A stretch of 64,000 nt of DNA, taken from assembly GCF_006345805.1 (NCBI RefSeq), contig NC_042998.1:185690001-185754000 (forward strand), in the 5' to 3' direction. Below are positions 5,961 through 40,929 of the stretch, piece by piece; position 1 is the first letter of the stretch, and every line of letters starts with the position of its first letter. Source of the stretch: Octopus sinensis. Its lineage: Eukaryota. Under the pieces are notes generated by a model. The model did no database searches. It was given only the letters and a program-made list of their open reading frames with translations, and was not told the origin of the DNA. A program made the translations under genes and the position numbers.

Positions 5961-6144
5961 CTTAAATTTCTGACCGTGTGTCAAAATCAAAAACCATTAT
6001 TTACCCAGAAATTATTCTTTACAAAGCAGTTTTAGACAGTTCTTAAGATTTGGAAATGTCTTCATACCTTGGGAAACTATCGATTATAATAATTCTTTTC
6101 TACTAAAGGCACAAAGTCTGAAACTTGGTGGGAGGGGATAGTCG

Positions 6145-15589: not shown

Positions 15590-16186
15590 AGAGTGAAATG
15601 AGTTGGCGAGAATGGAGGGAAGAGCAGATGTCAACTCGGGATTTGCGGTTGCTTTTGGACAATTCATGAGGCACCATTTTCCACGTTTAGGAACCTTTCC
15701 AAGTTGTTGAAGATAACGATGAACAGTTGTATGGTTTGAATTAAGCTTTATTGCCAATTCTTCAACTGATAATGCAGCATTTTCTTCAAGTAATGCCTCG
15801 AGGAGCTTATCATCAAACTCAACTGGACGTACAAGGCTGAAATCTCCACTTCTGGATTTTGCAAACCATCTTCTGCAAGTTCTTTCATTCAAACATTCTT
15901 TCCCATAAACTGAGTGTATGTTTCGAGTCGTTTCGACTGCAGAGTTTCCATTTTTGTACTCATAAAGCATTATGAACCTCAAATGCTCTTTGGATACTTC
16001 CATGTTAGAAAGGGTTTTAATCAAAGAAATTTTAATTCTATTATTCTGTAAAATAATATTTAATTAATTTAAATGTACACAAATGCATAAAAATAATTTT
16101 TAATTCCATTAGACATTCTAAAATACTATTAAAATTCATTCAATTTTAAGAAAGGTAAAATCGGACAGAACTTATGGGATGAACTG

Positions 16187-19894: not shown

Positions 19895-20268
<374 letters not shown>

Positions 20269-20272
20269 TCTA

Positions 20273-20291
20273 GTTCGATTCCAGGCAGTGA

Positions 20292-20360
<69 letters not shown>

Positions 20361-22874
20361 GACTGGATTATACAAACTGAAGGATCCTACCAAAATTTAC
20401 AACAACAAGCATGGGAAGACATCACAATAGCAGACCTAAGAAAGGCACTCACGAAGGCCCATAATTGGAAACCCCCCGGTAAAGATAGGGTGCCGAATTT
20501 CTGGCTCGCATCGCTCCCATGCGCACACGGTAAGCTAGTTCAGCTGCTCAATGGAATTATGACAGACCCAAAGAAAACACCTGAATGGTTAGCAAGTGGT
20601 ATTACTTACCTACTCCCAAAGAATAACGAAACCAACCTTCCAAAAAACTATCAGCCTATAACCTGTCTATCCACCACGTATAAAATCCTAACATCTATCC
20701 TGGCGGAGAAAACATATGCATTCATGGAGAAGAACGATATTTTCCCCATTGAACAAAAAGGGTGCCGCCGAGGCTCATGCGGATGCAAAGATCAACTGCT
20801 AATTAATCGTATGATCCTTGAGAACTGTCACAACAAGTGCAGAAATCTCAGCTCCGCATGGATTGACTATAAAAAGGCCTTCGACAGTATACCGCATTCA
20901 TGGATCTTGAGATCGCTGGACATCTTCAAAATTTCCCCTGTGATTTCAAGCTTCCTGAAGCACAATATGTCGCTGTGGAATACGAATCTCCAATTATACC
21001 ACTCTAATAGAGTACTTGCCTCAGAAAATATAAACATCAACTGTGGAATTTTTCAAGGTGACTCACTTTCACCTTTAATATTCTGCATAACCCTAATACC
21101 CCTTACAAGTGAATTTAACAGAACAGGGTATGGGTATAAAATTGCCAATAAAAAAATAAGCCATCTATTTTATATGGATGACTTAAAACTCTGTGGTAAA
21201 GACAATAATGAACTTGAAGGCCTATTGCGCACTGTGAAAGCATTCAGCGATGACATCGGGATGGAGTTTGGACTTGAGAAGTGTGCCAAGGTCACTTTCC
21301 AGAAAGGGAAAGTGAAGACCACAAATTCAATCGTGTTAGATGTTGACACAGTCATAAGAGAGCTTGAGCAAGAACAAACATACAAATATTTAGGGATAAA
21401 TGAAGGCTCTGGTATTCAGCATGCAAGCATGAAAGAGAAGATCAGGAAGGAATGTTATAGGAGAAATCTGAACTAAATGCACGTAACAAGGTGTTAGCTA
21501 TAAATTCCTTAGCAGTTCCAGTTGTTACTTATAGCTACAATGTGTTGAACTGGAATATGAGTGAAGTAAAGAATATAGATAGGAAAATACGCAAGCTACT
21601 GAGTTGTAATAGGATGCACCACCCAAAGGCAGACAAGGAGGTTGAGGCCTGATCCAATTTGAACTAGCTTACAAAACAACCACAATTGGACTGGCCAAAT
21701 ATCTTGAAATAACGAATGACTGGATGCTAAAGCTCGTGGAAAATCACGGGAGACGAAATAAGATTCATTCTATCATAAAGGAAAGCAAAAAATTTGCTAT
21801 TGATCTCGTGCAGGATACCCAGATTGAACAACCCGAGGGAAGTACGGCAACTATTGTTGCAAAGAAGGTGAAAATAATGGCAACGAAAAAAGCGCACGAG
21901 CAATTGGCTGATAGGTGGGAGGAGAAACCTCTGCACGGCAAATATGTGGTCCGCAGCAAACAAGCTGATGTTGACCAGAAGTAAACCCATCAGTGGCTAC
22001 GGAGCTCAGGGCTAAAAGCAGAGAGCGAAGGTTTCATCCTGGCTGCTCAAGATCAAAGCCTATTAACCCGGAACTACCAGGCCAATGTGATGCAAAATGG
22101 AGCAGACCCAAAATGCCGATTCTGCAACGACATGATTGAAACAGTGGACCACCTAATCTCTGGATGTAAAGTCTTAGCACCAGAGGATGTATAAATTAAG
22201 ACATTACAGAGTTGGCCAATATCTACACTGGCTAATAAGTGGGCATTACAATATCAAAACTGCCGACAAGTGGTATAATCACCACCCTGAAGCTGTAACT
22301 GAAGGAGAAAATGTAACGATTCTGTGGGACTTTCCAGTACATACAGACCGAACCATCAAAGCCAATAAACCAGATATTGTTGTGAAAGACCAAAACAATA
22401 AAGTTTGCTTATTGATCGACATGAGCATCCCCTGTGATCATAATATCTCGGCGAAAGAGTTTGACAAGCTCAGAAAATATAAAGACCTACTCATTGAAAT
22501 TGAGAAAATGTGGCATCTCAAGGCGGTTACAATACCAGTGATCGTAGGAGCACTAGGAATGATCAAGAAGGGAACCGAAAATTATATGAGAATGATCCCT
22601 GGCTTACCATCCCTGCAAGAAGTGCAAAAGATTGTCTTAACTGGTACATCACACGTATTGAGAAGAGCATTGTCGATGTGAGAATTATTACTACCCATGT
22701 ATTTTAATTTAATTAAAAAAAAAAAAAATGAACGAACTATTGAGTTTAGTTTAATGGCCTACCAATGTATACTATGAGTTTCTATGCCCTAGGAGTCGGG
22801 AAGATACCCGGCTAGAAATGGAAGCAAATTTGAAAGAAGAAAAACAAATAATGATAATAATAATAATAATAATA

Positions 22875-22944
<70 letters not shown>

Positions 22945-22988
22945 AACAACAACAACATCGAAAAATACCTTCGGAATGAGAACCCAGG
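20273..22988 (+). mobile_element. Second SINE D copy (5'-truncated), split by the R4/Dong insertion
   Basis: B-box and (aat)n at 20273-20360. The SINE resumes after the insertion with (aat)n(gat)n aacatcgaaaaatacc..gagaacccagg at 22847-22988. Confidence 0.8.
20361..22846 (+). mobile_element. R4/Dong-clade non-LTR retrotransposon (RT, CCHC, restriction-like endonuclease), 5'-truncated, with several stops and frameshifts
   Basis: RT motifs EQKGCRRG..KDQLLIN, WIDYKKAFDS, GIFQGDSLSP and YMDDLKL; CCHC CRFC..ETVDHLISGC; RLE ILWDF..TD..I.ANKPDIV..LID. Flanked by (AAT)n on both sides. Confidence 0.9.
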
Positions 22989-23404
22989 TATTTGCAAAGG
23001 GAGATACCGAAAGGTCACAGAAAGTGTGCCTAAAGCCAGCTGGAGGAATTGTTCTCCTGGGGCTAAAAGCTACAGTAACACCCACCCTTAGTGGTTAGCC
23101 ATATTGAGATGGCAAATATACCTCACATTGTCGTGCAGTTACTGTTAATACCTCGTTCAGAGATTTATTATTTCATTTAATAGTAAAATTTTCAAAATCT
23201 GTGATAGTAACTCTTCTCTCTCTCTTTCTTTCTTTCTATCACTCTTTCTGTTTATCTATTTCTTTCACTTTCTCATGGTAAACTTTTTTCACTTTCGGTA
23301 AAAGTATACAGCTCACGCTGAGTGTGCGTGCGTTTGTCAGTGTGTGTGTGTGTGTGTGTGTATGTATACATGTGATTTGATAAAGGTATTTTTTAAAATT
23401 CTTT

Positions 23405-23780
23405 TATTCTTCTATTTGTTTCAGTCGTTTGACTGCAGCCATGCTGGAGCACCGCCTTTAGTCGAGCAAATCGACCCCAGGACTTACTCTTTGTGAGCCT
23501 GGTACTTATTCCATCACCCCTTACCCTTGCCGAACCGCTAGGTTACGGGGGACATAAACACACCAGTATCAACTGTCAAGCGATGGTGGGGGTACAAACA
23601 CAGACACACATATTCACACACTCACTCACACACACACACACACACACACATACGATGGGCCTCAGTCGCCGTCCTCCAAATTCACTCGAGTTGAAGACAC
23701 TTGCCTAAGATGCCACGCAGTGGGACTGAACCCAAAACCATGTGGTTGGCAAGCGAGCTACTTTCCACACAGCCACACCT
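23405..23780 (-). mobile_element. SINE family C
   Basis: Colinear with 7494-7914. Confidence 0.8.
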
Positions 23781-24509
23781 GCACCTAATTTATTTTGATA
23801 GTAAATATGGCTTTTCTTATACAGACACGCGCGCGTACACACACATACACACACACACAGACTCGCTTGATTTTTTTTTGTGGGGGGGAGTTTAAAGGTT
23901 TAAGTAAGATTTTTTGTTGTTGTTGCTTAAGTCCTAGCTATGGATCACCACATCATCATTCCATAAAATGTGTTTATGGGGGGAAAATATTGGAAAACAG
24001 AAACGAGGAAGGTACCAGATGGCCGTGAGATGTGTTCGAAACAACAGCTAAAATTCCTTTAAATCACACATCCTTTCGCCTGAAAATAATTTTGAAATTA
24101 TATACAGAAACAAATTGCAGATTCTGACTGACCATATTTTAAAACTGATTTTTAAATTTCAGAAATAAAAATTAAAAAAAGTAGAAATTATAGGATTTAC
24201 GGAGGGGCAGGATTAATGAAAAGTTTTAAAAAGATTTCACTCTTGTTTATAAATTATGCTTTATCTTCTCTTTCAAATTTTTTGTTTTTGACCTTCGAGG
24301 CTTCTCCTATTGCGTGGTGCAATAAAAACATTGGCCAAAATCGATACTGAGTTTAAAAAAAAAAAATTTTCATGAAACAGTTTCCCCCGCCTATCATTTA
24401 CAAGGGTGTGACAAAAAAATTAAAATTTGAAAAAGCTACGTCAAAACAGAGAAAAATCCAACTTAAGTGGGTGTGCCATTCCAAAAGTGCGCCAAGACAT
24501 TCTATTGTG

Positions 24510-24547
<38 letters not shown>

Positions 24548-24551
24548 ATAA

Positions 24552-24633
24552 AGTTAATCCAAACAAGAAAACAAAAAGACAACAACGCAAGGATGTGGAA
24601 CAAATAAAGTATTATTGGACGCTCAGGAAAGAA
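24552..24633 (-). mobile_element. Fragment of the PLE-type repeat seen at 43880-44060, truncated before the HHR
   Basis: gttaatccaaac..ttattggacgctcaggaaag is shared. Confidence 0.65.
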
Positions 24634-24642
24634 GGGAAGAAG

Positions 24643-24695
<53 letters not shown>

Positions 24696-24962
24696 TGTGT
24701 GTGTATGTATGTATGTAGTTGAAGATGTTATGACACACTCACATGCACATTATGAAAAAGAAAACAAAGCTGGTTAGTTTAATTATTTCCCAAGTCAATA
24801 ATTTATGCACAAAACTTTATATATAGAATATAATCTGTGATCTATGCATGCCTATGCATGACTGAGGGTTTCGAGTGTCCTGTCCGTGTTTATTGTGTCG
24901 TCTTCTAAGAGTTATACGTTCTTGTCCATGTTGTATTTTTCTACATACCTTAATATATATAT

Positions 24963-25009
<47 letters not shown>

Positions 25010-25145
25010 GTGGTGTGTGTGTATACTTATGTGTGTGTGTATACTTATGTGTGTGTGTATACTTATGTGTGTGTGTGTGTGTGTGCAGATAGATGTATAA
25101 GTGCGTGTATACATATATAAATATACGCATGTATAATTATGTCTC

Positions 25146-25363
25146 TTTTACTCTCTTTTACTTGTTTCAGTCATTTTTGACTGTGGCCATGCTGGAGCAC
25201 CACCTTTTTAGTCGAGCAAATCGACCCCCAGGACTTATTCTTTGTAAGCCTAGTACTTATTCTATCGGTCTCTTTTGCCGAACCGCTAAGTTACGGGGAC
25301 GTAAACACACCAGCATCGGTTGTCAAGCGATGGTGGGAGGGACAAAGACAGCCACACAAAACA

Positions 25364-25398
<35 letters not shown>

Positions 25399-25457
25399 GG
25401 TCCCGGGTTGATTCGGGGTTAACCACTCCTTCTATATAATATATATATATATATATA

Positions 25458-25496
<39 letters not shown>

Positions 25497-25606
25497 ATAT
25501 ATATATATATATACAACCACATATATATATATACACATATACGACGGGCTTCTTTCAGTTTCCGTCTACCAATTCCACTCACAAGGCTTTAGTCGGCCCG
25601 AGGCTG
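25146..25606 (-). mobile_element. SINE family C, 5'-truncated, with expanded (TA)n
   Basis: Family C 3' end and body are present. Confidence 0.8.
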
Positions 25607-25702
25607 TGTATGCATGTATGTATATGAGTGTACACATATATACATATTCATACACACAAGCGCACTCACACTCACCGTCATAATTACATATCTATCTATC
25701 TA

Positions 25703-25780
<78 letters not shown>

Positions 25781-25873
25781 GGTAGCTAGCTAGCTATCTA
25801 TACATACATACAAACATATTATTTGCATAATATACACTCATATATAAATATAAATATTATATATCTATATAGA

Positions 25874-25904
<31 letters not shown>

Positions 25905-25916
25905 GTATTATATATT

Positions 25917-25986
<70 letters not shown>

Positions 25987-26082
25987 TATTGTGTCTGGGA
26001 ATCTTGCAAACCAAATCCAAAAACGAAATATATATATATATATTTAAAGGTTTAAAAATTTATATATATATATAATATAATA

Positions 26083-26113
<31 letters not shown>

Positions 26114-26682
26114 GTATGTATGTATGTGTATGTATGTATGTATGTATGTGTGTGTGAGTGTGTGTGTGTTTACACACACGCACAGACAATACAATCAAGC
26201 GCGCACACTCACACACACGCACGTCAACCACTGCCATAACTATAAACACAATCAGTGAATTTCTTTTCGAGACAAATAAAATATCATTTAAATGCAAAAT
26301 AAAAGTATCTTACCAAAATAGACTTCCTTTTGGCATTTCGGACACTTGGGCATGTTGACAGATTTTTGTTATATTAGATGCGATAGAAAATATAATAAAT
26401 GTAGGAGATAAGTATTGCTACTGACTGTAAAAGGAGAAATCCTCGCTATATGAAAGCAGAATTTCGAGTAGTTAGGTCGCTATCAAGTCCAAACAGTCAT
26501 TGACAGATGACACACCTACGCTGTTTACGAAACTGGTCTATGAGAACGGATGATATAACAAATCTACCGTGCATAATACACGCTGATTTGGATATGAGCT
26601 AGTTGATCGATCGTTGCGTGCAGTTCTTCCATCTTTTAACCTTTTGCTTTTTCCAGTCATTAGAGTGCAGCCATACTGACTG

Positions 26683-26894
26683 TGTATGTGTGTGTGTATG
26701 TATGTATGTATGTATGTATGTATGTATGTATGTATGTATGTATGTATGTATGTATGTATATATTATGTATGTATGTATGTATATATTATGTATGTATGTA
26801 TGCATGTATTATGTATGTATGTATGTATGTATGCATGTATTATGTATGTATGTATGTATGTAGTATGTATGTATGTATGTATTATGTATGTATG

Positions 26895-26928
<34 letters not shown>

Positions 26929-27468
26929 TGTATGTATGTATTATGTATGTGTGTATGTATGCATGCATTTATGCATGTATGTATGTATGTATGTATGTAT
27001 GTATATGTATGTATATGTATGTATGTATTATGTATGTATGTATGTATGTATGTATGTATTATGTATGTATGTACGTATGTATGTATGTATGCATGTATTA
27101 TGTATGTGTGTATGTATGCATGTATTTATGCATGTATGTATGTATGTATGTATGTATATGTGTATGTATGTATTATGTATGTATGTATGTATGTATGTAT
27201 GTATGTATGTATATATGTATGTATGCATTATGTATGTATGTATGCATGTATGTATGTATGTGTGTGTATGTATGTATTTATGTATGTATGTATTTATGTA
27301 TGTATGTACTATGTATGTATGTATGTGTGTATGTATGTATATATGAATGTATGTATGTATTACGTATGTAGTATGTATGTATGTATGTATTACGTATGTA
27401 TTATGTATGTATGTATGTATTACGTATGTATTATGTATGTATGTATGTATATATGTATGTATATATAT
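26683..27468. repeat. About 780-bp degenerate (TATG)n array
   Basis: Tetramer array with TAT, TACG and TGCA interruptions. Similar arrays at 51074-51375 and 54720-55030. Confidence 0.95.
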
Positions 27469-27469
27469 A

Positions 27470-27798
27470 ATGGTGACCCCCTTCGGTCAGACACTGATCA
27501 TGGGTTTGCACCTAGAGAGTTACCCTCTGAGGCACAAGTCTGGGCAAGGTTGTTTTATGGAAGACCATGCATACCGGCCTCCCCTCTCCACGTCACCGAT
27601 GTTGTCCAAGGGAAAGGCAAGGGCCGATACAGCTTGGCACCTGTGACGTCGCAACTCATTTCTACAGCTGAGTGAACTGGAGCAACGGGAAATAAAGTGT
27701 CTTGCTCAAGAACACAACACGCAGCCCGGTCCGGGATTCGAGCTCACAACCTCACGATCGTAAGCCTGACGCTCTAACCACTGAGCCACGCGCCTTCA
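27470..27798 (-). mobile_element. SINE family B variant with a different tail (tail Y)
   Basis: Head and central domain as in 10599-10745, but with an unrelated 3' half. Confidence 0.85.
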
Positions 27799-28325
27799 CA
27801 TGCATGCATATATGTGTACAGGACATCATCAATGGTGCAAATAACATGGAATACGTAAACAAACTGGAGAAAAGGAGTGAAATATGTAAACAACGAGAGA
27901 AAATGGAAAACAGGTCAAGTTAACACAAAGAATTTATGTTGCTTGGTATTTTTATATACAATTTCTTTTTGTTCAAGTGCATGCCACTGGCCACTCCTAG
28001 TTATTTCAATAAGTTAAATTTAATTCAAATTATGCAAATGATCATAAGTGTGTTTCCGCTTGCTGGAGGCGAAGTTGGGCTATTTCTATGCTGATAATGC
28101 CTGTTGTAGCAGAAACACGTGTCTACAACTGCTCTCTTGTCTCCAAACAATCAGATTGTCTTTTCCTTAATGATATGTCAATTTTGTGGTATTTTAAAAT
28201 CATTTGACTGATGTGAAGTTGATCCCAATTACCACCAGACGATTATTTTATCTTCTCTAGAAACAGACGTAATTTTAATAAATAAGAAAGTTTATACATT
28301 ATTACATCTATGTAACATTAATACC

Positions 28326-28640
28326 ATGCTAATACTTGGATGTATGTGTATACATACGTTCATAAATATATATATAAACAAAGTTGAAATTTACAGAAAA
28401 ACAAAAGACGAAGACAGGTGTATAAACAACAAACAGATGTATTGGTTTAACACTCGGGAAGGTGAGAAAATCTTTAACGTTTCGAGCCTACGCTCTTCAA
28501 CAGAAAGGAACACGAGGAAATAAGCAAAGCGAGAATAAAAAAATCTTTTGGAGCTAGCGGTCAGTCATGCTGGCTGGCTGGACAGAGGTAGTTAGACAGG
28601 AGAGCTAGGAAGAAGGGGAGATAATAAAGTATTGGCGATC
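28326..28640 (-). mobile_element. PLE-type 3' repeat with variant HHR fold (CUGUUGA, 28472-28507)
   Basis: Minus strand: cttt-ctgttga-a-gagc-gtag-gctc-gaaa-cgt-t-aaag. Flanks are shared with 9320-9575. Confidence 0.7.
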
Positions 28641-29100
28641 CAAAAGATGCGCGTGCGTACACACATATACACATGTATGCTTCTCTCTCTCACATATATG
28701 TGTGTGTGTGTGTGTGCGTGCGTGTGTACGTGCGTGTGTGTGTTGGTAGCAGAGCATATGACATTTTTCACTATTATTATCTCTCACGCTTTTTTTAAAG
28801 CCCCACCCATTTTTATGAATGTTTTCTACGGATACTTCATATCGTTTATATAACACAAATAGAATATTTTGTGTACTAAACGAAGCAACAAAATTAAAAA
28901 AAAAAACAACTCAGAATGGGTGTTGAAAAAATAAAATTACACTGATCTTTATGGAGCTTATTATGAATCACTTAAGCCTGTTAAAATATTAACACTTGAT
29001 TTCAAGCGATTTAGGCAAACGTATGAAGCGAGAGTTATTTAGGAAGAGCGGGTGTCATGAATTTGACAACTTTTAGACTACATTAATAAGTGGGATCCTA

Positions 29101-29520
29101 CCTTAAATCCTTAAAAATGTTTTAGCCCGAAGGCCGCGGCCATGCTAGGGCACCACCGCTGAATGAGCTACACTAATTTGTGAATCCATCTCTGATATGT
29201 GGCACTTGATCAACAAGGGAGTTCGATGCTGCTGCCCGCATCCGCGTCTCCTGTCATGAGGTAGGTTCATCTGGGACTCCCGACAAGAAGAGATCCAGTT
29301 TAGTTTTAAAGAAACCCACATCCACACCATGTAAGTCTCTCAGGCATTTAGGGAGGATGTTGAAGAGCTGTGGTCCTCTGAAACCCAAGCTGTTGCAGTA
29401 TCTGGACCTGTATTTTTTCCAGATGTATATCACTGCATATCTTTCCCGCCTCCGCTCTAGGGAGAAGAGGTTTAATACCTTCAGTCTTTCCCAGTAGACT
29501 GAAGGTATTAAACCAAATAC
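29101..29520 (-). mobile_element. CR1-like LINE 3' remnant with internal deletion, terminal stem-loop and short tandem tail
   Basis: LKVLNLFSLERRRERYAVIYIWK..GPQLFNILP..FKTKLDLFL..VPDEP. The 3' end reads ggtggtgccctagcatggccgcggccttcgggctaaaaca. Confidence 0.8.
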
Positions 29521-30194
29521 CAAATACTTTTTGTAATAAAATATTTTGGAATTGTCAATAAATACCACAGAGAATTTCCATTAAATGAATATAGATGAAA
29601 ATTGTGATAACGAAACGTCAGTAGTTTCAACGAATTTGTACAATACTAACGACAAAGGACTTTATTGTACTCAAATAAAATAGGAAAATATGGAATGAAT
29701 TAGTATATTACTCTATCACTTTCTGAAAATTTGAAATGCTTTTGTTTCAATGTTTTGAAGATGAAATATTATTACAAATGCAAATATAGACTAATATATT
29801 TATCTCTATAAATATTTGGTGATCATTTGAAATGAAAAGAGTGTCAGAAAGTTAAAAATCTATTCACACTTGTTTTATGTTTTATGTTCTACCTACCCCC
29901 TCTTCCTATTTTCTTTATTCACACACATTGTCTTTTTCTCTCACTTCCTCTCACACTTTTCAACGTTTCGTATAACAGTCCGCCACCAAGTAATAAAGAG
30001 ATGTGAAGTTAAAGAATTTAAAACCAAAGAGAACAGCACAAACATAACTCTATTAACACATTCTCATTCTAGGCCTTAACTATTCATTAAGGGATTGCGA
30101 GACTCTTTCATTATATATGTATGTAGTTAAGTTTGTATCTATCTGTATAAAACAATGTTTGCGATATCTATCTATCTATCTATCTATCTATCTA

Positions 30195-30255
<61 letters not shown>

Positions 30256-30602
30256 ATTCTGTCTGTCTGTCAGTTTGTCTGTCGGCTTGTCTATCTCTCT
30301 GCCTGCCTGTCTGTCTGTTTGACAGTCTATCCATCCATCCATCAGTCCGACCGTTCTTCCGTCCATCTATCCATCTATCCATCCACCCATCCATCCGTCC
30401 GTGCCAACTATCCATCGATCAGACCATGGGGTGCACTGAAAATATTTGATCAAGGTTGTACAGGCAACACGTCTCATAAATTTAGGTTATCCTCATACCT
30501 GTTACACCTGTTACACGAAATTCTGAAATTCGGCTTAATAATAGCACGCACACGCACACACACACACACACAGACACACAGACACACACACACACACACA
30601 CA

Positions 30603-30633
<31 letters not shown>

Positions 30634-30885
30634 CGCACGCACACACTACGGTATGCGGACGATGACATTAATAATACATGCGCCTATGGCATACTCAGCC
30701 GTATAAACGTTAATGTAACGAATAAATTGTTTGTTTGGTTCATTGATTAAGTGAAATTCTCACCGTCGAAACCGACGGAAAATCAATTTGCTTTTATTTA
30801 TTCCTTTTGTGTGTGCATACAATAGCTCATACTACGTAGCTCGTGCTAAAAACATAAACAATTAGACCAACATACCATATACATA

Positions 30886-31917
30886 TGTAGAGGGTCCGTA
30901 CGTAAAGGAGATGGTGACAAAATGTCTCCTTTTGAACGCCGCACGGTCGCCTTAAAAAAGAAGCCAAAATAATGGATAAATGAATAAGAGTGCCGGTAAA
31001 GAATCAGAAAAACGACACAACCGATATATATATAAGAGAGAAAAGGTTTTATTCAGATGTTAACCTGTGGGTAGCAGAGCGTGTGTTCGTGTGTGCGACA
31101 AGTGTGTGTGTGTGTGTGTACGTGTGTGCATTATAAATAAGTACAAACAAGGTGTGTTCGTGAGTGCGACATAAGTGTGTGTCTGTGTGTTCGTGAGTGC
31201 GTTATAAGTGTGTACATAATAATAAAGAACAATAGAAATGAGTCTCTCAGGATGCTAGATGAATGTTCACACAAGATGTTGATAAATACCAGTTCGTTGT
31301 AAGACACACCATAGCAGAGGTTCTGTAACAGAGAGGTTGAGGCTACAAAGTGGAGAGCCGGTTGAACACATGTCGTGTAGCGGTTGTGGCTTCTATCCTA
31401 TGACGGGTTACTTGGTACAGAAAGTTCTCGCAGGTAGACTGGAGCTGTTAGCCTTGGTTAGTATTCACAAACAGCGTGAAGTTAAACCTGGACGAAATTG
31501 ATGTGTACATATTGTTGAAGTCCACGGTGGTGATGGCGACGGTGGAAAAAGTTCCTGAGATGCTGCGGTGGTGTTGGTGTCATCACTGTCTGTCGCAGGA
31601 ACATGGCTGAGTCGCTCGAACTGGCTGGTCTGTCGCTGGATGCTCTGTGGTCAATGGTCTAGGACCAAAGACGAAATGGTCTGTCGTGACTAGCCTTTAA
31701 AGGATTTAGGTGGCTCAAACAAGGCATTAGAAAAACAGCGTCATGGGACAGCGTCTGAAGGTTGCGATTGGTTGGTTTCCACATTGGCGCGAAATAAAGC
31801 AAGAGATAAAACTGCACCAAAACCAACCAATCAGAGCAGCGGACACAACTGGGCCTAAGCAACCGAAGGATGGCTGTCATCCGCTACGTCCGCATTTGTA
31901 TTGTATATCTCAGAGAG

Positions 31918-31957
<40 letters not shown>

Positions 31958-31974
31958 ATTTCACTAACGCTACA
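30886..31974 (-). mobile_element. Solo LTR (1089 bp)
   Basis: Ends TGTAG..CTACA, with a 4-bp TSD CATA at 30882-30885 and 31975-31978. Strand is inferred from a minus-strand AATAAA near 31050. Confidence 0.7.
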
Positions 31975-32514
31975 CATATATGGTTTACTCACTTTTTTTC
32001 TCTTGCTTAGTAGCCAAAAAATTCGCTGAAAGTAGTTAGATCGACCCGACTACACACACACATATACACGCACGCATGCACACACACAAACACGCACGCG
32101 CACACACGTGCTAACGTGCGCGTAAATTGTGTATGTTTGTATATATGTAAGTATACTTAGAGACTCAATTTACATACACTTTCCTGGCTTTTGTATTCTT
32201 CCTACATTGACACTGCTAGAGGAGAGTCCGATTCGCTTGCCGTCTAGTATCCTTTTTTACTCGTATCCTAGATAAAATTACCACCACATTTAATAACTTC
32301 AAACTCAACATTTGCCAATGCAGTATCGTTTCTATAGCCATTGGATCAGATACTGATTCAATAAAATCGTAAATATCTCATCCTCGGACGTTTAGCAATA
32401 TTATGTTAGCTAAATAGTTAGATCTCGGCTAGTTTTATGCTGTCTAACCCAGGCATTAAATATATTTTCTTCCTATCCATCTGAGACGACTATATGCTGA
32501 AGCATCGCATTTAG

Positions 32515-32660
32515 CCGACCAAATCGACCCAAGGTCTTACTCTTTGTAAGCCTAGTACTTATTCTATAGGTCTCTTTTGCCGAACCGCTAAGCTACGGGG
32601 ACTTAAACACACCACCATCGGTTGTCAAGCGATGTTGGGGGTACAAACACAGACACACAA

Positions 32661-32706
<46 letters not shown>

Positions 32707-32710
32707 TATA

Positions 32711-32748
<38 letters not shown>

Positions 32749-32918
32749 TATATATATATACGACGGGCTTCTTTCAGTTTCCGTGTACCAAATCCACTCA
32801 CAAAGCTTTGGTCGGCCCGAGGCTATTGTGGAAGACACTTACCCAAGGTGCCACGCAGTGGGACTGAACCCGGAACCATGTGGTTCGTAAGCAAGCTACT
32901 TACCACACAGCCACTCCT
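32515..32918 (-). mobile_element. SINE family C lacking its 3' tip
   Basis: Colinear with 7494-7914. Confidence 0.8.
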
Positions 32919-34399
32919 CACATTCTGAAGTTCATAGACACAAAACCCCTAAATTCTTAATTCGAAGATGTACTGCAGCAGAATACATGGAAAGCACTAG
33001 AGGAATTGAAAGCATCAATACCACCAAAGCCAATTGATAAGTTGGCAAGGAAGTTTTGTGAATCGCACATCATTCAGACTCCTAAATTACAGCAGAATCT
33101 TGTGTTCCTTTGCTAAAAGGATTTACCAAGTGTAATTTTTGCAGAATTCTTTAACTGCCTTTTCGTTTTATAGTTAATTTAAATGCCCTCACATTCACTG
33201 TCCGCTTCACTCCCTACAATACCATACAAGCTCACTCTATTCCTTTTCTCTGCCTCACCACATGTACGCAATTATTAAAATCGAAAATACATCCTGGAAG
33301 TTGCATTTCAAAAGTTTTGTGACATTTGTAGTTCTTTAATTCTCCTTCAAAAAAACATCTGCTCCCCAAAACTATCTGGCTGCATCCCTCCTCCTCCTCC
33401 TCTCTATTTTTCTCTTCCTGTCATCCATCTCATTTTTCATTTCTTGTACCAAACACTTCAACAATTCCTCCATCCCAGAACTCCAACTCTCATGAATTCA
33501 CTACGTGGTCATTTTTTTCTTGAAAACACTAACTTACAAATTCTGAACGCTTGTCGAATCAATCTAACCAGTATCGAAGAACCTGCAAAAATCATCGGCG
33601 TCTTTTCCTTTGATAATCTTACATAAAAAATATGAACACCCATTTCTCTCTTTCTTCCCCCCGCTTTCATTCCCAACTATGCAAGGGGAAAAGAAACCAT
33701 GTAAGACCTAGACTGGGATTCAAAGATTCTGCAAAAAGGAATTGATCATAATAAATGGCAAACTCTAGCAAAAAAACGACCAGCATGGAGAAAGCGGATC
33801 TAGTTAAACTGATTCATAAAATCAGCTCCCTTTAATTTTGCTCAGATTGCTTTCAGTTTGAGTGTATCGATGCAACTTTGAATTTTGATTACGATCAACC
33901 AATTATTTTATCTCGTAAATTAAAGAATCTAATGTTAATAATGGGTAATTTAGGTAATTTTAGCCAATCAACAGACAGCGAGGCATTAACAGCTTGTTAC
34001 CATGAAAACCGCACGTTGTGTTGTGTTGATTCTTCACACCACGAGATTTACTTCACCCGCGTGTTTTATTTTAATAAAAATTTATTTTATCAATTAGAAA
34101 TTTATTATAGATATTTTGCATCAATTCTCCTAATATTTTACATATTTTTCATATATATTTTACATATATTGGTGAAGTTTTTCTCTGTTACCCAGGTCAG
34201 GCCAGAATGAGTCATTCTGTATTTTTAATAAAGATGCAGGACAATATTATTTGATCATATCTTTAATTGTGGCTAGCTGAAACAGTCTTCTATAGACTTA
34301 TTATATACGAATAGTTGATGTTAAACACACGCCAAATACGAAAATTAATCTTTGCATTTATTCTGTCAACAACGCTCGAATTTAGATCACAAAGCATAA

Positions 34400-34545
34400 C
34401 GAAAATATTAAAATGTGGCTTGATAGATTCTTCAAGTGATTTCTACCATCAAGATATTGGCAAGCTTGTGGAACATGTACAAGTTATGAACAATGAAAGA
34501 GAATATATTATTTCGCTGATAGTCCATTCCGCTGCAAAATAATCT
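34400..34545 (+). pseudogene. Mariner transposase C-terminal remnant
   Basis: DFYHQDIGKLVEH..NNEREYI resembles FY..GI.KL..RW....GEY. Confidence 0.5.
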
Positions 34546-35649
34546 CAAAAATTTGAATGCAGAACAAGCTGAGAAAACAATAAACATCAGTTGTTTACAA
34601 ACTTGTACTCATTGATTGCTCAGTTACAATTGGATCGACTGAACATTGAATAATTAAATAAAATTTCTATGAAGACAGTTCGTTTACTGTCACTGTACCA
34701 GGAGAACCTAATCTGTGCTCAGAAAAATATTACTGAAAAAGAACAGGTCATTTCACTGACGCTAAACTATAAATACACAGTTTTTTTCGATTTTTAAACC
34801 TCTAATTTTTTCCTCCGATCTTTTCTCCACATCATACTTTTATAGTAATAAGAGTGGAAAACTACATTAATATAGCCGATTTTTAGATTTTTTTTACTGC
34901 CTTTTAAAAAATGCAAATTTTGTGAATCAGTTTAACTAGATCCGAGAAAGCTTATCAAGTCATGCAAACGACTAACTGCGAGTAATGTGCCTCGACCTCA
35001 AAATTAAAAATAAGAAAGTTTAAATTAAAGCATGTACGGTAAAATTATTTTTCCTTCACATTCTATGCTATTTATACTGTGCTCTTGTCCTATATTCTAT
35101 CGACAGCTGGTTCATATATTATGTGACCTTAGTCGATAATTTAAACTCTTTAAGCTTTTGTTATTCTGTATAAAGTCCTCGCGTGCGCACAGTGAGAGAG
35201 AGAAAGAGAGAGAGAGAGATGGGGAGAGAGAGAGGGAGAGAGAGAGATGGGGAGAGAGAGATGGGGAGAGAGAATAACATGTGTACGTAATTCAAGCTGA
35301 TAAGTGACTCTGTACTACTAATGACATAAAGTTTATAAATTCCTTCATGATTTTTCTTTTTCATTCTAAAGCATGCTGATAACCTGAATTATTGTTTTAT
35401 AGCAGTTGTCTCGTCTTTTAAGCAGCCCTAATCAAGCAAAATCATGGTCAAAGGTGATCTTGTTGTAATTATTGTATAAACTTAACCAATTTTTTCCTTT
35501 TATTTATCTATTTATATAAAATCGGTAGGATTTGTTTTGCGTTTGATTTGCTGTTGTGTCTAGTAGGTCGAGGATGGGTTATTCGACTGCTGAGAATCAC
35601 TTATGGTAAAGGGACCGAATAACCCACTGATACAGTTCAATATTTATAT

Positions 35650-35871
35650 CTGTTTCTTTATTGCTCACAAGGGGATAAACATAGAGGGGACAGACAGACG
35701 GATTAAGTCGATTACATCGACCCCAGTGCGTAACTGGTACTTGATTTATCGACCCCGAAAGGATGAAAGGCAAAGTCGACCTCGGCGGAATTTGAACTCG
35801 GAACGTAACGGCAGACGAAATACGGCTACGCATTTCGCCCGGCGTGCTAACGTTTCTGCCAGCTCGCCGCC
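35650..35871 (-). mobile_element. SINE family A
   Basis: Full head and body. Confidence 0.85.
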
Positions 35872-36279
35872 TTAACCAGCTCGCCATATCCGAGATATTT
35901 AACATTTAGTGGCATCGCCTATCTTATGACAAGCAGTTTCCTTTCCTCCCAAACCGGGATGGGTTGGCATGTTGAACACTGTGCAAGTAAATGAGTAATT
36001 CGTTAATTTATAGTGTCAACTCCTATTACAAAAAAACTTCAATTTAATTGATATCAGTTACTAATGTTGTTGATTTTCAACATCATAATATAAGGGTTAT
36101 TACATTAATAGATGTTTACTATTGATTAAATGTCTAGTTAATGTTAAAATATTTTTTCGGACTTTAATCTCAACTTTTGGGTGTACTTTTTGTAGTATTT
36201 ATATTTACACCGTGTTTCGACTGGTTTAATCCCCGATCGTTGTAGATCTGGCTAGGCATATTATACCAGGCTAGGAATC

Positions 36280-37133
36280 TTTATTTCTAAAAATGGAATA
36301 CTGGTCGAGCGACGTCCGGGTATTCTTTAAAGATAGTACTGTGACGGGTTGTCGTTGTTTGTAAAATAGTTGGGCAGACTGTGGCCATACGAGCGGTTAT
36401 ACCGCGCACAGTGAGCTGAGTGGTGTTGTCAACAAGTCTTCTGTGCTTGATGTCTACAAGGAGACCGAAATGATGAAGAAATCGGCTCCTAAAATAGAGA
36501 TCGGCAGTTTGGCAATGACGAATACCCACTAGAAGAGGCTGCGTAGTCTTAAGTTTAGTGTTAGGGACTGTTTACCGTAGGTTGGAATCGGTGAGTGGCT
36601 GACTGCCTGAAGGCAGACTGGTGTCTCTTTTCTGTTGCCTGAAGTGCAGTAAACAGGGATTATGCTGACTTCCGTGCCGGTGTCAACAAGGAAACACATG
36701 CTTGTTACACGATCGCAGACGTAAAATAGGCAACATTGTGAGTGAGAGCGAGGAACTTCCATCGCGTTCAGTTCTTGGCTGAGTCGTTTCCCGAGGGCAC
36801 TCGCGCTTCGTGATCGCCTACCAAATCGACGCGTTCGGTTATTACTTCGATGGGGGATACCAAACGATAGGGCTTGTACCTGCTCTGTCAGGGCCTATAT
36901 CTGTGATGCCCGCTGCACCACCAATGCATGCAAGTCAGAAATTTCCGAAACACTGGACGACGAAAGGAAAGGATTGGTGGAAAGAATCGCTGCCTGGAAT
37001 GCCATGTTGACCGTGGATGAGTTCACCGCTGGGTTGTGTTCCGGTAGAGACATAACGACTAATGGCAGCAATTTTTCAGTTCTGATTTAGTGATGTGTGA
37101 TATGAAGGCTGTCATTCTTCGTCGGGGTCACCA
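36280..37133 (-). mobile_element. Ty3/gypsy internal remnant (leader and protease region, gag largely deleted) with tRNA-Trp PBS
   Basis: PBS TGGTGACCCCGACG at 37133-37120; FLVDTGTEVSIIP. Homologous to 59040-60570. Confidence 0.8.
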
Positions 37134-38634
37134 AATCTAGCGAGAATGTGTAGCAAATGAAGAAAAGCGTGTTGGACGACATCAAAGGAAAATAATAAGG
37201 AAAGCATCGGAATAGTTTAAATAATCTATTTGATCAACACTTGCATTTACGCGTTAGTACACAAAGTTTGATTTACAAAATCAATGAAGTTACCAACTGC
37301 TTCGAGTTGGCGAAGTAAAAATCAACAGGAGAAATAGTATGTCGATGTGATGAGATAGTACACGGCATATTTTGTATGTGTGTGTGCGTTGGTCATTTGG
37401 TCGGGTCGTGTTTTTTCCAGTTCTGTCTGTTTGTGTTCTGCGACTGCTACTGTGTTGTACCGCCGGTCACTGCTTCCTCACTTACAACTCTGATGTTCCT
37501 GGAAAAGGCATGTAATTTAACAACTTCCTAATCCTGATAAAATAGTAGACCCCTATACGAATAAACTTGCTTAAAGCTAGGAAGGAAAAGAAATAAAAGA
37601 AATCCTACAAACATCCACGTTATTAACAGAGTTTTTGTTATTATCTTTAATATTTTCCACATCAGATTTAACCCATAATACAGTTTAAAGTTGTAAACAG
37701 AAGTTAATAGGAGAAACATTAGCTTGGGCGTTTAATTATTTCTTCAAGTAGTTTACAGTCGCAAGTAACATGCCAAGAATATTTAATTGTAGTTATAATT
37801 TATTGTCTAAGGAATAAAAGCATGTCTCAGTACAACATAATACGGTCGCTCTACATATTATTTTCAAACTGAAAGGTGAGTAATAAAAAAGAGGTATACA
37901 TTACAATATTGTCAAAGAGGTGTTAAGGTTGTAGAAGCAAGTTTGTATTCATACATAAGTTATTTCTCAACCAATTCCCGCCCGTCCGGACTTCATCAAC
38001 AATGTACAAGTATAATATATAAAAACATAATATATAAAAGAACCAGTTAAACTTGACATGGAAACTAGCCAAATAGGTTTATTCTAATAGCGTCAAACAA
38101 ACGACTTGGTGACCGTCGAGGTTTGTTTGGCTACGACATACTTTGAAAGTAAGTAGGACACAAATTAAACAATGCAAATTACACTGAGAACATACTGGCG
38201 GTTAGCAGGAGGGAGTAGATAGAACCATATGGCCCTTGTAACTGAAAAATCGATCAGGAATTAGAAGCAATGGAATTCAGGACCCTTTCGTTCGACCACC
38301 ACTCAACTAATTTCAATTTTAAAAATATCCGGTCGAATATATTTTGTCCCATCCGGGGATCAACTAAAGATAATTTCAGTTAATCGATTTAGTTGATTCT
38401 ACATCTCACTCTCGGCAACAGCGATTTAGTATCGACTCATATAAACTCTGTTTTATAATTAATTTGGTTTCTTTATTAATGAAAAAATGTTTAATATAGG
38501 CACAGGTCTTCATATTTTTGAGGCCTCATATTAAATCAACCTCAGTCAGTGTTTGAACACGAACTTGTTTATCGATCCTATAATAATGATAGAGCGGTGT
38601 TGTGACAGTAAACGAACTAGAACTCAGAACTAAA

Positions 38635-39073
38635 GGATCTTTTCGGTTTGAACGGCAGTTTTTTAAAATAATTTCCACATAACTAAACACTTTTAAACTT
38701 CGTATACTGGTAGAATGTGTTTATAAAACATCTTTTTCTCTTGGCTTTATTGAGAAAATTCTATAGTTTGTAAGATATTTGTTGTTTTTTTTCTTCAGTT
38801 TCCGCAATTTCAACCAATCAATGACGTCTATTGAGGTGAAAACATTCTGTGCCGTATGAATATGTCCCTCGTTTAAGAAAGAGATTGGGTTTATTTACAT
38901 TTCTGAAGAAAAAAATAGATAACCTCCCTCACCCCTAACCCTAACTAACCCTAACTCTAACCCTGACCCTAAAACTGATTGAAATGCAATAGCTCGATAC
39001 TAGGGTCATAATTATGGGTGACAATTTCATATGACACCGCTAGAAAAAACTGCCGTTCAAACCGAAAAGATCC
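38635..39073. mobile_element. MITE family H (about 28-bp TIRs beginning GGATC, 8-bp TSD), Merlin-like
   Basis: TIR ggatcttttcggtttgaacggcagtttt and its inverse. TSD gaactaaa at 38627-38634 and 39074-39081. Confidence 0.85.
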
Positions 39074-39460
39074 GAACTAAATCCCAAGCCAGCAGTATTT
39101 AGTTTTGTCCCTCTATACCCTGAGTTTAAATCCAGTCAGTGTAAAAATTCGCTCAAATAAAATAAGTACAAGCCATGCAATGACGAATATTCAACTGACT
39201 CTTATAGGCCTCTGAAGAGTTCACCGTACAGCACAATCTATATGCTTGTATGACTTCTCCTATTTCTCTTTCGTCCTTGCTTTAAGTTAGCATCTTGTCA
39301 TAGGAGCCAAACATTTTAAGAGCTCACCACACAACATAATCTGTCACCATAAATGATCAACTTGCTAGGGCATCTTTTCACCACAAACAACACACAGCAG
39401 AAGAGGCTGATCCTCGCTGCCAGTCCAATGAAACCCAAACCTTAAATAGCTGTTGCAATA

Positions 39461-39648
39461 TTATTTACATTATTTACATTTGACGGATATTTGTCCTCAT
39501 CTTGTTTGTTGTTAACACAACGTTTCGGCTGATATACTCTCCAGCCTCCATCAGGTGTCTTGGGGGAAATTTCGAACATGGGTTCTCATTCCTAAGGTAT
39601 TTAACGATGTTGTTGTTGTTGTTATCATCATCATCATCATCATCATCA

Positions 39649-39713
<65 letters not shown>

Positions 39714-40069
39714 TAGTTTTATTTTTATAGCGTGCTTTCACTTCACTACCGAGCGCAGCTCTGTGTGCCTTGGGTATGTGCTGTGATTTGTTGTGATGCT
39801 CTGATGGTTATTGTATGGAAAGTGTTCTGCGTAGGATGTGTGCAGTGCCTAGTAGTGCAATTTTCTGTGTTATATGTGTTTGTAAGTCCTGGTGTTTTTG
39901 TTATGTATTTGTCTGAATATTTTTTTATCATGCCTAATGCACCTACTATGATAGGAATTGTTTCTGTTTTCAGGTTCCACATTCTAGTTATCTCTATTTC
40001 CAGGTCTTTGTATTTTGAGAGTTTCTCTATTTCTTTTAGAGACACGTTGTCATCTGCCGGTATTGATAC

Positions 40070-40103
<34 letters not shown>

Positions 40104-40200
40104 ATTATTATTATTGTTATTATTATCATTATTCAGGTCACTGCCTCGAATCGAACCCGGAATGTTGGGGTTAGTAGCCCTCGCTTTTAATCACTACGCC

Positions 40201-40203
<3 letters not shown>
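39461..40203 (-). mobile_element. SINE D copy split by an R4/Dong 3' fragment; HHR-like fold at 39514-39559
   Basis: Head at 40130-40203, then (aat)n, the insertion, (aat)n(gat)n, and the tail at 39461-39600. Confidence 0.85.
39711..40069 (-). mobile_element. R4/Dong 3' fragment (endonuclease end and 3' UTR)
   Basis: VSIPADDNVSLKEIEKLSKYKDLEIEITRMWNLKTETIPIIVGALGMIKK, homologous to 22420-22600 but from a different family. Confidence 0.85.
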
Positions 40204-40244
<41 letters not shown>

Positions 40245-40326
40245 TAATAATAATAACAACAACAACAACAATAACAATGTTAGTGATGGTGTTAATACGA
40301 GAGGTATTTCTTAAGGGTTTCTTCTT

Positions 40327-40404: not shown

Positions 40405-40492
40405 TTACTATTATTCAGGTCACTACTTGGAATCGAACTCGGAATCTTGGGGTTAGTAGCCCGCGCTCTTAACCACTATGCCATATGCCCGT
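40405..40492 (-). mobile_element. SINE D head, with a plus-strand tail fragment abutting it at 40493-40527
   Basis: A-box TGGCATAGTGG and B-box GTTCGATTCC on the minus strand. Confidence 0.8.
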
Positions 40493-40929
40493 GAACAACA
40501 GACAAGGTGAGGACAAATATCCGGTTGGGGAAGGCAGCGGCAAACTATCCCAATATCTCTGTCAAACAATACTATGAGAAAGTCAGAACAAAGCAACGCT
40601 ATGGCTTCATCTGATAGTAGAACTTGCGCTTAATTGGAAAGACTTTTGTTGTAGTTTTATCAACGCGTTACGGTACATGACGCTGCCACCGTCAGCAACG
40701 AAGATGTGTGTATGTATGTATGTATGTATGTATGTATGTATGTATGTATGTATGTATGTATGTATGTATGTATGTGTGTGTGTTGTGTGGAGAGAGAAAG
40801 AGAAAGAGAGAGCCAGAAACAGAGATAGAGATGGGTGGACATGGGATGGAAAGTCGCTGAAGAGGTCACAGGTGTGCGACGAAAGATTTCCAGATATTGG
40901 ACATAAAATAAGAACAATAACGAACAAGT

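What the first reader, a model, noticed from the sequence alone, without database searches (positions are those of the whole stretch)
20273..40203. R4/Dong elements inserted twice into the internal (AAT)n array of the same SINE family
Seen: a 2.5-kb Dong element (20361-22846, plus) and a 359-bp Dong 3' fragment from a different family (39711-40069, minus). Each lies between the head and tail of a SINE D, inside its AAT array and co-oriented with it. Known: Dong elements target TAA repeats. Inference: the SINE disperses Dong target sites, and head-Dong-tail chimeras might be transcribed from the SINE Pol III promoter. This would be a three-way SINE/PLE/Dong interaction.
Basis: partly seen in the sequence, partly recalled or inferred. 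Interest (0 to 1): 0.78.

Follow-up and report, generated by a model that had tools for sequence, protein, structure and literature searches.

The report
Dead Dong retrotransposons nested in SINE microsatellites
Two broken copies of a known microsatellite-seeking jumping gene (Dong) sit in AAT repeats carried by a short tRNA-like repeat (SINE); this fits Dong's known habit, and nothing here shows a special partnership with the SINE.

Summary
20361-22846 (+) is a 5'-truncated, frame-broken non-LTR retrotransposon. Its RT sits in a 100/100-supported clade with reference R4 and Dong elements, and its C-terminus folds like the R2 restriction-like endonuclease. 39711-40069 (-) holds the last ~84 codons plus 3'UTR of a second Dong family (63% aa identity).

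Both lie in (AAT)n arrays of a composite SINE: tRNA-like head, then (AAT)n(ATG)n(AAC)n, then tail. Leaving out the second insert restores a complete SINE, 92% identical to an intact neighbour. The first insert is flanked by only 24 nt of head and 45 nt of tail.

- Co-orientation follows automatically from strand-specific (TAA)n targeting.
- About half of the window's AAT-array bases are SINE-borne, so two of two hits has P of about 0.21-0.28.
- The free arrays host another (AAT)n-embedded retroposon, which I call X.
- Chimera 1 lacks an A box and has T4/T5 terminators. Chimera 2 could in principle be read through, but nothing supports this.
- No PLE or hammerhead signal was found.

The genome-wide test could not be run because no octopus genome was available. 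Verdict: ordinary nested insertion with a plausible but untested ecological hypothesis.

The parts
19905..20075 (-). SINE D copy 1 (intact), tail. It ends in TGTAAATAA-type repeats.
   Evidence: 89.6% identical over 164 nt to the tail at 39460-39623. The TGTAAATAATGTA motif occurs without mismatch only in SINE D tails in this window; one 1-mismatch match lies elsewhere, at 11091.
20076..20203 (-). SINE D copy 1, uninterrupted internal (AAT)n array of 128 bp.
   Evidence: TRF period 3, 42.7 copies, 98% matches.
20204..20271 (-). SINE D copy 1, tRNA-like head.
   Evidence: 88-94% identical to the heads at 40134-40204 and 40416-40500. A-box-like and B-box-like strings are present.
20272..20295 (+). 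Head fragment of chimera 1: 24 nt of the 3' end of the head, B-box part only. It is inverted against the 5' end of copy 1.
   Evidence: 23/24 match, E=6e-6. No A-box string. The two head pieces form a hairpin that Rfam scored as a spurious mir-344 hit.
20296..20360 (+). (AAT)n, 65 bp, upstream half of the split array.
   Evidence: TRF, 100% matches.
20361..22846 (+). Dong element 1: 5'-truncated and degenerate. RT 20361-21473; further open pieces 21461-21649 and 21646-21981; CCHC knuckle 21985-22191; RLE 22178-22678; 3'UTR to 22846.
   Evidence: Pfam RVT_1 4e-28. 43% identity to Bombyx Dong, and a 100/100 clade with R4 and Dong references. RLE fold: pLDDT 86, best Foldseek hits R2Tg and R2Bm. 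Collinear with P0001 residues 360-1134.
22847..22944 (+). (AAT)n(ATG)n(AAC)n, downstream half of the array, with the same microsatellite order as SINE D copy 2.
   Evidence: TRF; alignment of the joined flanks.
22945..22989 (+). First 45 nt of a SINE D tail. The sequence beyond this point is unrelated to the canonical tail.
   Evidence: 91% identity, E=4e-13. The local alignment stops at 22989.
39440..39625 (-). SINE D copy 2, complete tail.
39626..39710 (-). (ATG)n and (AAT)n on the SINE sense strand, the 3' half of the split array.
   Evidence: TRF rows 39624-39652 and 39651-39710.
39711..40069 (-). Dong element 2: the last ~84 codons (one frameshift) plus the 3'UTR of a second Dong family.
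   Evidence: 63% aa identity to element 1. Matches P0001 residues 1051-1134.
40070..40133 (-). (AAT)n on the SINE sense strand, the 5' half of the split array.
   Evidence: TRF.
40134..40204 (-). SINE D copy 2, head. A box has one mismatch; B box reads GGTTCGATTCG.
   Evidence: 87% identical to the other heads; motif scan.
40416..40500 (-). Third SINE D head, followed by (AAT)n then (GAA)n and no recognisable tail.

Best explanation
Two independent, dead copies of Dong-type (R4 clade) non-LTR retrotransposons, from two different families, integrated by target-primed reverse transcription into (TAA)n/(AAT)n microsatellites.

The element's restriction-like endonuclease nicks the TAA array. The 3' (TAA)n end of the RNA pairs with the nicked strand. 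Reverse transcription stops early, which gives the 5' truncations.

In both cases the array hit happens to be the internal microsatellite of a composite tRNA-related SINE: head, then (AAT)n(ATG)n(AAC)n, then tail. The SINE contributes nothing beyond carrying a TAA array. Co-orientation follows from strand-specific targeting combined with the fixed polarity of the SINE's array.

Shown here: element identity, domain content, truncation, nesting and flanks. Inferred: the TPRT mechanism (from the R2 and Dong literature) and the order of events.
For: - Clade: the RT is 43% identical to Bombyx Dong and 32% to Ascaris R4, against 28% or less to R2, NeSL, HERO and Utopia. The ML tree places it in a 100/100 clade with R4 and Dong references (references from PMC5678591 supplement).
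- Endonuclease: the C-terminal domain is modelled with confidence (pLDDT 86). Its best structural matches are the R2Tg and R2Bm proteins, followed by other PD-(D/E)xK nucleases.
- Truncation: the pieces are collinear with a full-length relative from residue 360, and from residue 1051 for the second copy.
- Target: both copies are flanked by (AAT)n on both sides. Relatives in O. sinensis (L001), another animal (L002) and a coral (L003) also end in TAA-type repeats. Dong is documented as TAA-specific (PMC3812793).
- Nesting: joining the flanks restores a SINE 92% identical to the intact copy.
- Chance: the expectation for two of two is 0.21-0.28.
- Other arrays: free AAT arrays host another 5'-truncating retroposon, X, with a constant 3' end followed by (ATA)n. 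A Dong in O. sinensis sits in an array with no SINE D head or tail around it.
Against: - Two of the four SINE D arrays in the window are occupied by Dong, which looks high. The window was, however, selected for exactly this feature.
- The flanks of the first insert are only fragments of the SINE (24 nt and 45 nt), so some rearrangement beyond simple nesting has occurred there.
- No genome-wide frequencies were available.
Confidence: 0.85

Rival explanations
1. First reader's model. SINE D specifically promotes Dong: its dispersed arrays are preferred landing pads beyond their share of TAA sequence, and head-Dong-tail chimeras are transcribed from the SINE Pol III promoter.
For: - Both Dong copies in the window lie in SINE D arrays.
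- Chimera 2 keeps a head with A-like and B-like boxes and has no T run of 4 or more over its 765 nt.
- SINEs (11.6% of the genome) and Dong-R4 (1129 recent insertions) are both abundant in O. vulgaris (PMC13282606).
Against: - P(two of two) is about 0.21-0.28 from array content alone.
- Free arrays also take TAA-embedded insertions.
- Chimera 1 lacks an A box and has T4/T5 terminators at +469 and +778.
- Co-orientation is forced by the targeting rule.
- No expression or multicopy data are available.
Confidence: 0.08
2. The head-(AAT)n-Dong 3' fragment-(AAT)n-tail unit at 39440-40204 is itself a transposing SINE subfamily that captured a LINE 3' piece, not a one-off nested insertion.
For: - SINEs are known to acquire LINE-derived bodies (PMC5786205 abstract).
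- The unit is compact at 765 nt, has a complete head and tail, and has no Pol III terminator.
Against: - Only one copy was seen.
- The Dong piece has the ordinary structure of a 5'-truncated insertion flanked by the two halves (64 + 60 bp) of an array of normal total length, against 128 bp in the intact copy.
- No second copy was found in the window, in L001 or in the public collections scanned.
Confidence: 0.04
3. The arrangement arose by recombination or replication slippage between AAT arrays, joining unrelated head-array and array-tail pieces around Dong elements, rather than by insertion into an intact SINE.
For: - The flanks of chimera 1 are only fragments (24 nt and 45 nt).
- The region is an inverted head-to-head structure.
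- All three heads have inverted SINE-like or array sequence at their 5' ends.
Against: - The flanks of chimera 2 rejoin into a complete, collinear SINE.
- The (AAT)n(ATG)n(AAC)n order downstream of Dong 1 is exactly that of SINE D copy 2.
Confidence: 0.03

Closest known systems
Dong (Bombyx mori) and DongAg / DongBg, R4 clade of RLE-bearing non-LTR retrotransposons
   Same: - RT is 37-43% identical and falls in the same 100/100 clade.
- RT is followed by a CCHC knuckle and a C-terminal restriction-like endonuclease.
- Insertion is in (TAA)n with a TAA-type 3' end (PMC3812793).
   Different: - These are cephalopod families: the closest database relatives are 52-71% identical in the RT and up to 84% in the endonuclease piece.
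- Both copies are dead fragments.
- The arrays hit are internal to a SINE rather than free or rDNA-spacer microsatellites.
R2 elements (R2Bm, R2Tg), solved TPRT complexes
   Same: - Same RT family: best PDB sequence matches, E=5e-20.
- Same endonuclease fold: TM 0.55-0.67 normalised to the query.
- Presumably the same TPRT mechanism.
   Different: R2 targets 28S rDNA. Identity is only 23-28%, and R2 falls in a different clade in the tree.
SINE- and LINE-seeded microsatellites, e.g. Alu/L1 A-rich tails giving TAA/GAA/CAA repeats (reviewed in PMC3812793)
   Same: A retroposon carries and disperses a microsatellite, and microsatellite-specific LINEs can then use it.
   Different: Here the array lies between the head and tail of the SINE, not at its 3' end. 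The link to a TAA-specific LINE is seen directly, but only twice.

Membership tests
R4/Dong clade non-LTR retrotransposon | RT groups with R4 and Dong references, apart from R2, NeSL/Utopia, HERO and CRE | tested here: met
   43% identity to Dong_pol and 32% to R4, against 28% or less to the others. IQ-TREE gives a 100/100 clade, with the window RT on the Dong side of R4.
R4/Dong clade non-LTR retrotransposon | C-terminal PD-(D/E)xK restriction-like endonuclease after the RT | tested here: met
   AF2 model pLDDT 86. Top Foldseek hits are R2Tg (E=2.8e-5) and R2Bm, then viral cap-snatching PD-(D/E)xK nucleases. KPD...D string at 22178-22678. The sequence-only PDB profile search was marginal, E=0.1.
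R4/Dong clade non-LTR retrotransposon | CCHC zinc knuckle in the linker between RT and RLE | tested here: met
   CRFCNDMIETVDHLISGC in piece 21985-22191. Pfam zf-RVT E=1.3e-4, 23 bits, below the 27.5-bit cut-off. The piece aligns to P0001 residues 906-973.
R4/Dong clade non-LTR retrotransposon | Dong-type target: insertion in (TAA)n with the repeat in sense at the 3' end | tested here: met
   Both window copies have (AAT)n on both flanks. L001 and L002 relatives end in TAA-type repeats.
R4/Dong clade non-LTR retrotransposon | Intact single ORF, i.e. a potentially active copy | tested here: not met
   Element 1 lacks about 359 N-terminal residues and has three frameshifts plus one in-frame stop. 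Element 2 is 359 bp. These are dead copies of the family; this does not argue against membership.
tRNA-derived SINE ('SINE D') | Head with internal Pol III A and B boxes of tRNA origin | tested here: inconclusive
   TGGCATAGTGG (perfect A box in head 3) and AGTTCGATTCC / GGTTCGATTCG (B-box-like) are present. ARAGORN and Rfam call no tRNA.
tRNA-derived SINE ('SINE D') | Multicopy unit with the same head-body-tail order in different flanks | tested here: met
   Copies at 19905-20275 and 39440-40204 are collinear and 92% identical, and similarity ends at the element borders. A third partial copy surrounds Dong 1. Only three copies were seen.
tRNA-derived SINE ('SINE D') | Tail shared with a partner LINE; target-site duplications | not tested
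   No partner LINE 3' end was found in the window. The tail ends in TGTAAATAA-type repeats, not TAA, which suggests a partner other than Dong (inference; compare UnaL2 TGTAA repeats, PMC3747384). TSDs are not discernible.
Penelope-like element / hammerhead ribozyme association | Hammerhead ribozyme or PLE RT/GIY-YIG sequence in or beside the SINE | tested here: not met
   No Rfam hit at gathering score in the window, nor at E up to 10 in the two SINE regions. By hand reading, the CUGAUGG...GAAAC string in the tail has an extra or changed core base and lacks the helix III / cleavage-site arrangement. No PLE domains were found in the ORFs tested.

The most novel reading that the evidence does not exclude
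SINE D's internal (AAT)n arrays are the main reservoir of TAA target sites in octopus genomes, so the SINE expansion fuelled the unusually large, recently active Dong-R4 population. In addition, units such as head-Dong 3' fragment-tail (39440-40204) may be Pol III-transcribed and retrotranspose as a new SINE subfamily.
Probability: 0.1. Interest if true: 0.55.

Novelty: new member of a known kind. Interest (0 to 1): 0.25.

Why it matters
If the ordinary reading holds, this is a clean, annotatable example of nested transposable elements: cephalopod Dong families in TAA arrays. It is useful for repeat curation but not surprising.

If SINE-borne arrays turned out to dominate the TAA target pool, it would be a concrete case of one mobile element creating the niche of another. 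That could help explain why Dong-R4 is among the most active LINE groups in Octopus (PMC13282606). Settling this needs a genome-wide count that could not be done here.

Tried and rejected
- **tRNA and ribozyme calls.** Rfam at gathering score over the whole window, and at E up to 10 on both SINE regions and on element X, gave no tRNA, hammerhead or other credible family. The only notable hit, mir-344, is the hairpin formed by the inverted head pieces. ARAGORN found no tRNA.
- **Endonuclease by sequence.** A sequence-only PDB search with the RLE piece found nothing. The profile search was marginal, E=0.1. The fold search settled the question.
- **More copies from the same genome.** Two searches of the 5.8-billion-protein set and one of the 1.84-billion representatives found no relative above 84% (RLE piece) or 71% (RT) identity, and only one Octopus protein, P0199.
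- **Contig look-ups.** These gave one O. sinensis locus (L001), one unrelated animal (L002), one short contig (L013, 885 bp, too short to reach the 3' junction) and one coral locus seen in many Tara samples (L003-L012).
- **Pattern scans.** Exact-pattern scans of metagenome and viral contigs for the SINE head-array junction returned zero.
- **Names.** Cluster-member names were uninformative.
- **Rejected: the tail is a hammerhead or PLE piece.** No model hit, and the core does not fit.
- **Rejected: 40271-40320 is a diverged tail.** The alignment score is no better than shuffles.
- **Rejected: Dong is the SINE's partner LINE.** There is no similarity between the tail and either Dong 3'UTR, and the tail ends in TGTAAATAA-type repeats.


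Full report
**What is in the sequence**

The window is AT-rich (37% GC) and full of microsatellites and interspersed repeats. A 560-bp repeat at 45088-45647 is 94% identical to an Octopus sinensis contig (L001 from GCA_006345805.1). The source is therefore an octopod or a close relative; this is an inference.

At both places named in the finding I read the same building blocks:
- a ~70-nt tRNA-like head;
- an (AAT)n array, followed in two of the three copies by (ATG)n, and then by (AAC)n;
- a ~165-nt tail ending in TGTAAATAA-type repeats.

An intact copy lies on the minus strand at 19905-20275, with an uninterrupted 128-bp array. BLAST within the window finds three heads (88-94% identical), one 24-nt head fragment, two full tails (89.6% identical over 164 nt) and one 45-nt tail start. 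Similarity stops at the element borders, so head-array-tail is a multicopy unit.

Head 3 has a perfect A box (TGGCATAGTGG), and all heads have B-box-like strings. ARAGORN and Rfam do not call a tRNA.

**The two inserts**

Element 1, 20361-22846 (+):
- It translates in five open pieces. These are an RT (Pfam RVT_1, E=4e-28), two linker pieces, a CCHC knuckle and a 167-aa C-terminal piece.
- The pieces are collinear with residues 360-1134 of a 1134-aa relative.
- The copy therefore lacks about 359 N-terminal residues plus the 5'UTR, and carries three frameshifts and one in-frame stop.

Element 2, 39711-40069 (-):
- It encodes the last ~84 residues of a related protein, with 63% identity to element 1.
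- It matches residues 1051-1134 of the same relative.
- Its 3'UTR is unrelated to that of element 1, so it belongs to a second family.

Both are 5'-truncated. Both end in, and are preceded by, (AAT)n on their sense strand.

**Is it R4/Dong?**

Among solved structures the RT is closest to R2 proteins, E=5e-20.

I took labelled reference sequences from the alignment published with PMC5678591. Identities to the window RT are as follows:

| Reference | Identity |
|---|---|
| Bombyx Dong | 43% |
| DongAa | 40% |
| DongAG | 37% |
| Ascaris R4 | 32% |
| R2, NeSL, Utopia, HERO | 28% or less |

A maximum-likelihood tree puts the window RT inside a 100/100 clade with R4 and the Dong references, on the Dong side.

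The C-terminal piece was modelled with pLDDT 86. Its best structural matches are the R2Tg and R2Bm proteins, followed by other PD-(D/E)xK nucleases. It is therefore the restriction-like endonuclease.

Dong elements are documented to target TAA microsatellites in a moth, a mosquito and a snail (PMC3812793). Some HERO families also target microsatellites (PMC4640811), which is why the phylogeny was needed. The Dong label stands.

**Nesting**

Leaving out 39711-40069 and joining the flanks gives a complete SINE, collinear with the intact copy and 92% identical to it. Its array is 124 bp against 128 bp in the intact copy. This is a plain nested insertion.

For element 1 the joined flanks give only three things:
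- the last 24 nt of a head;
- a 130-bp array with the same (AAT)n(ATG)n(AAC)n order as copy 2;
- the first 45 nt of a tail.

Beyond that the sequence is unrelated to the canonical tail. The 24-nt head piece abuts, in inverted orientation, the 5' end of the intact SINE. 'Between the head and tail of a SINE D' is therefore fully true for the second insert and only fragmentarily true for the first.

**Is the SINE context more than chance?**

Within the window, AAT-type arrays split as follows:

| Class | Array bases |
|---|---|
| SINE D arrays | 391 bp |
| Ambiguous | 54 bp |
| Free arrays | 401 bp |

If Dong lands in proportion to array length, two of two in SINE arrays has P of about 0.21-0.28. 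The window was also chosen because of this feature.

The free arrays are not empty. They hold two copies of another element, X (45088-45647 minus; 45934-46202 plus). A third X copy lies in O. sinensis. All three share a 3' end ...CTCTCTCACTCA followed by (ATA)n, have variable 5' ends, and have (AAT)n upstream in sense. X behaves like a TAA-array-specific, 5'-truncating retroposon.

In the O. sinensis locus, a Dong 76% identical to element 1 ends in an AAT/AAC/ATG array region that also holds X, with no SINE D head or tail. Generic microsatellite targeting explains everything seen.

**Orientation and Pol III**

Every Dong 3' end examined has the TAA-type repeat in sense: two in the window, plus L001 and L002. 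The coral L003 has (TAC)n then (TAA)n. The SINE always carries (AAT)n in sense. Co-orientation is therefore forced and is not extra evidence.

- Chimera 1 has no A box. It contains T4 at +469, T5 at +778, and further T4 runs at +897 and +2431. A Pol III transcript from the SINE promoter is excluded.
- Chimera 2 is 765 nt with a complete, though the most diverged, head and no T run of 4 or more. Read-through is possible in principle, but nothing supports it.

**PLE leg**

Rfam finds no hammerhead. By my reading, the CUGAUGG...GAAAC string in the tail does not fit the hammerhead core or its helix III. No PLE coding sequence was found among the ORFs tested. The tail ends in TGTAAATAA-type repeats, found without mismatch only in SINE D tails here. 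This points to a partner LINE other than Dong (inference; compare UnaL2, PMC3747384).

**What could not be done**

No octopus genome is reachable with these tools.
- Protein searches found nothing closer than 84% identity, and only one Octopus protein.
- Pattern scans of metagenome and viral contigs for the head-array junction found nothing.
- The normalised frequency test and the search for multicopy chimeras therefore remain to be done.

**Verdict**

These are two dead Dong copies from two families, nested in SINE-borne TAA arrays. This is a known behaviour in a new host and context. The facilitation idea is reasonable: SINEs make up 11.6% of the O. vulgaris genome, and Dong-R4 has 1129 recent insertions there (PMC13282606). 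It rests on two events that chance explains. Interest is low to moderate.

Noticed in passing
window 45088-45647 (-), 45934-46202 (+); L001:7032-7523: Element X is a non-coding retroposon of at least 560 bp. It has a constant 3' end (...CTCTCTCACTCA followed by (ATA)n) and variable 5' ends, and is always embedded in sense (AAT)n arrays. The window copy is 94% identical to an O. sinensis copy that lies just downstream of a Dong. X is possibly a non-autonomous passenger of the Dong machinery. It has no Rfam head.
   Followed up: partly
window 20272-20295, 40205-40270, 40491-40523: All three SINE D heads have inverted SINE D-related or inverted-array sequence abutting their 5' ends: a 24-nt head fragment, an (AAT)n(AAC)n array, and a 33-nt tail-like stretch (30/33 matches, 0 of 300 shuffles as good). 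This head-to-head pattern is reminiscent of twin-priming-type inversions, but the sample is too small to judge.
   Followed up: partly
window 6140-6626 and 55436-56466: Tandem arrays (units of 117-184 bp, 2.6-4 copies) of another SINE-like sequence with a B-box-like GAGTTCAAATTCC string. The two arrays are in opposite orientations, about 49 kb apart.
   Followed up: no
window 38636-39075: A MITE-like element with ~30-bp terminal inverted repeats (GGATCTTTTCGGTTTGAACGGCAGTTTTTT and its complement). It encloses a degenerate (CCCTAA)7 telomere-like run at 38933-38972.
   Followed up: no
window 2854-4365 (-): An uninterrupted 504-aa ORF with a calponin-homology domain (Pfam CH, E=1.4e-8). It may be a host exon or a retrogene.
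   Followed up: no
window 2-1421 (+), 15407-16024 (-), 60886-61296 (+): Other mobile-element remnants. One is a different LINE RT (RVT_1 E=6e-26, 23% identical to the Dong RT) whose 3' side runs into (TTA)8 at 1396-1421. Another is a mariner-type HTH_48 ORF. The third is a further RT fragment.
   Followed up: no
L001:4390-5163: In O. sinensis, a fragment of a second Dong-like RT from another family directly abuts the 5' end of the Dong1-like copy, with no array between them. It is preceded by a 20-nt match to the SINE D tail end in reverse orientation.
   Followed up: no
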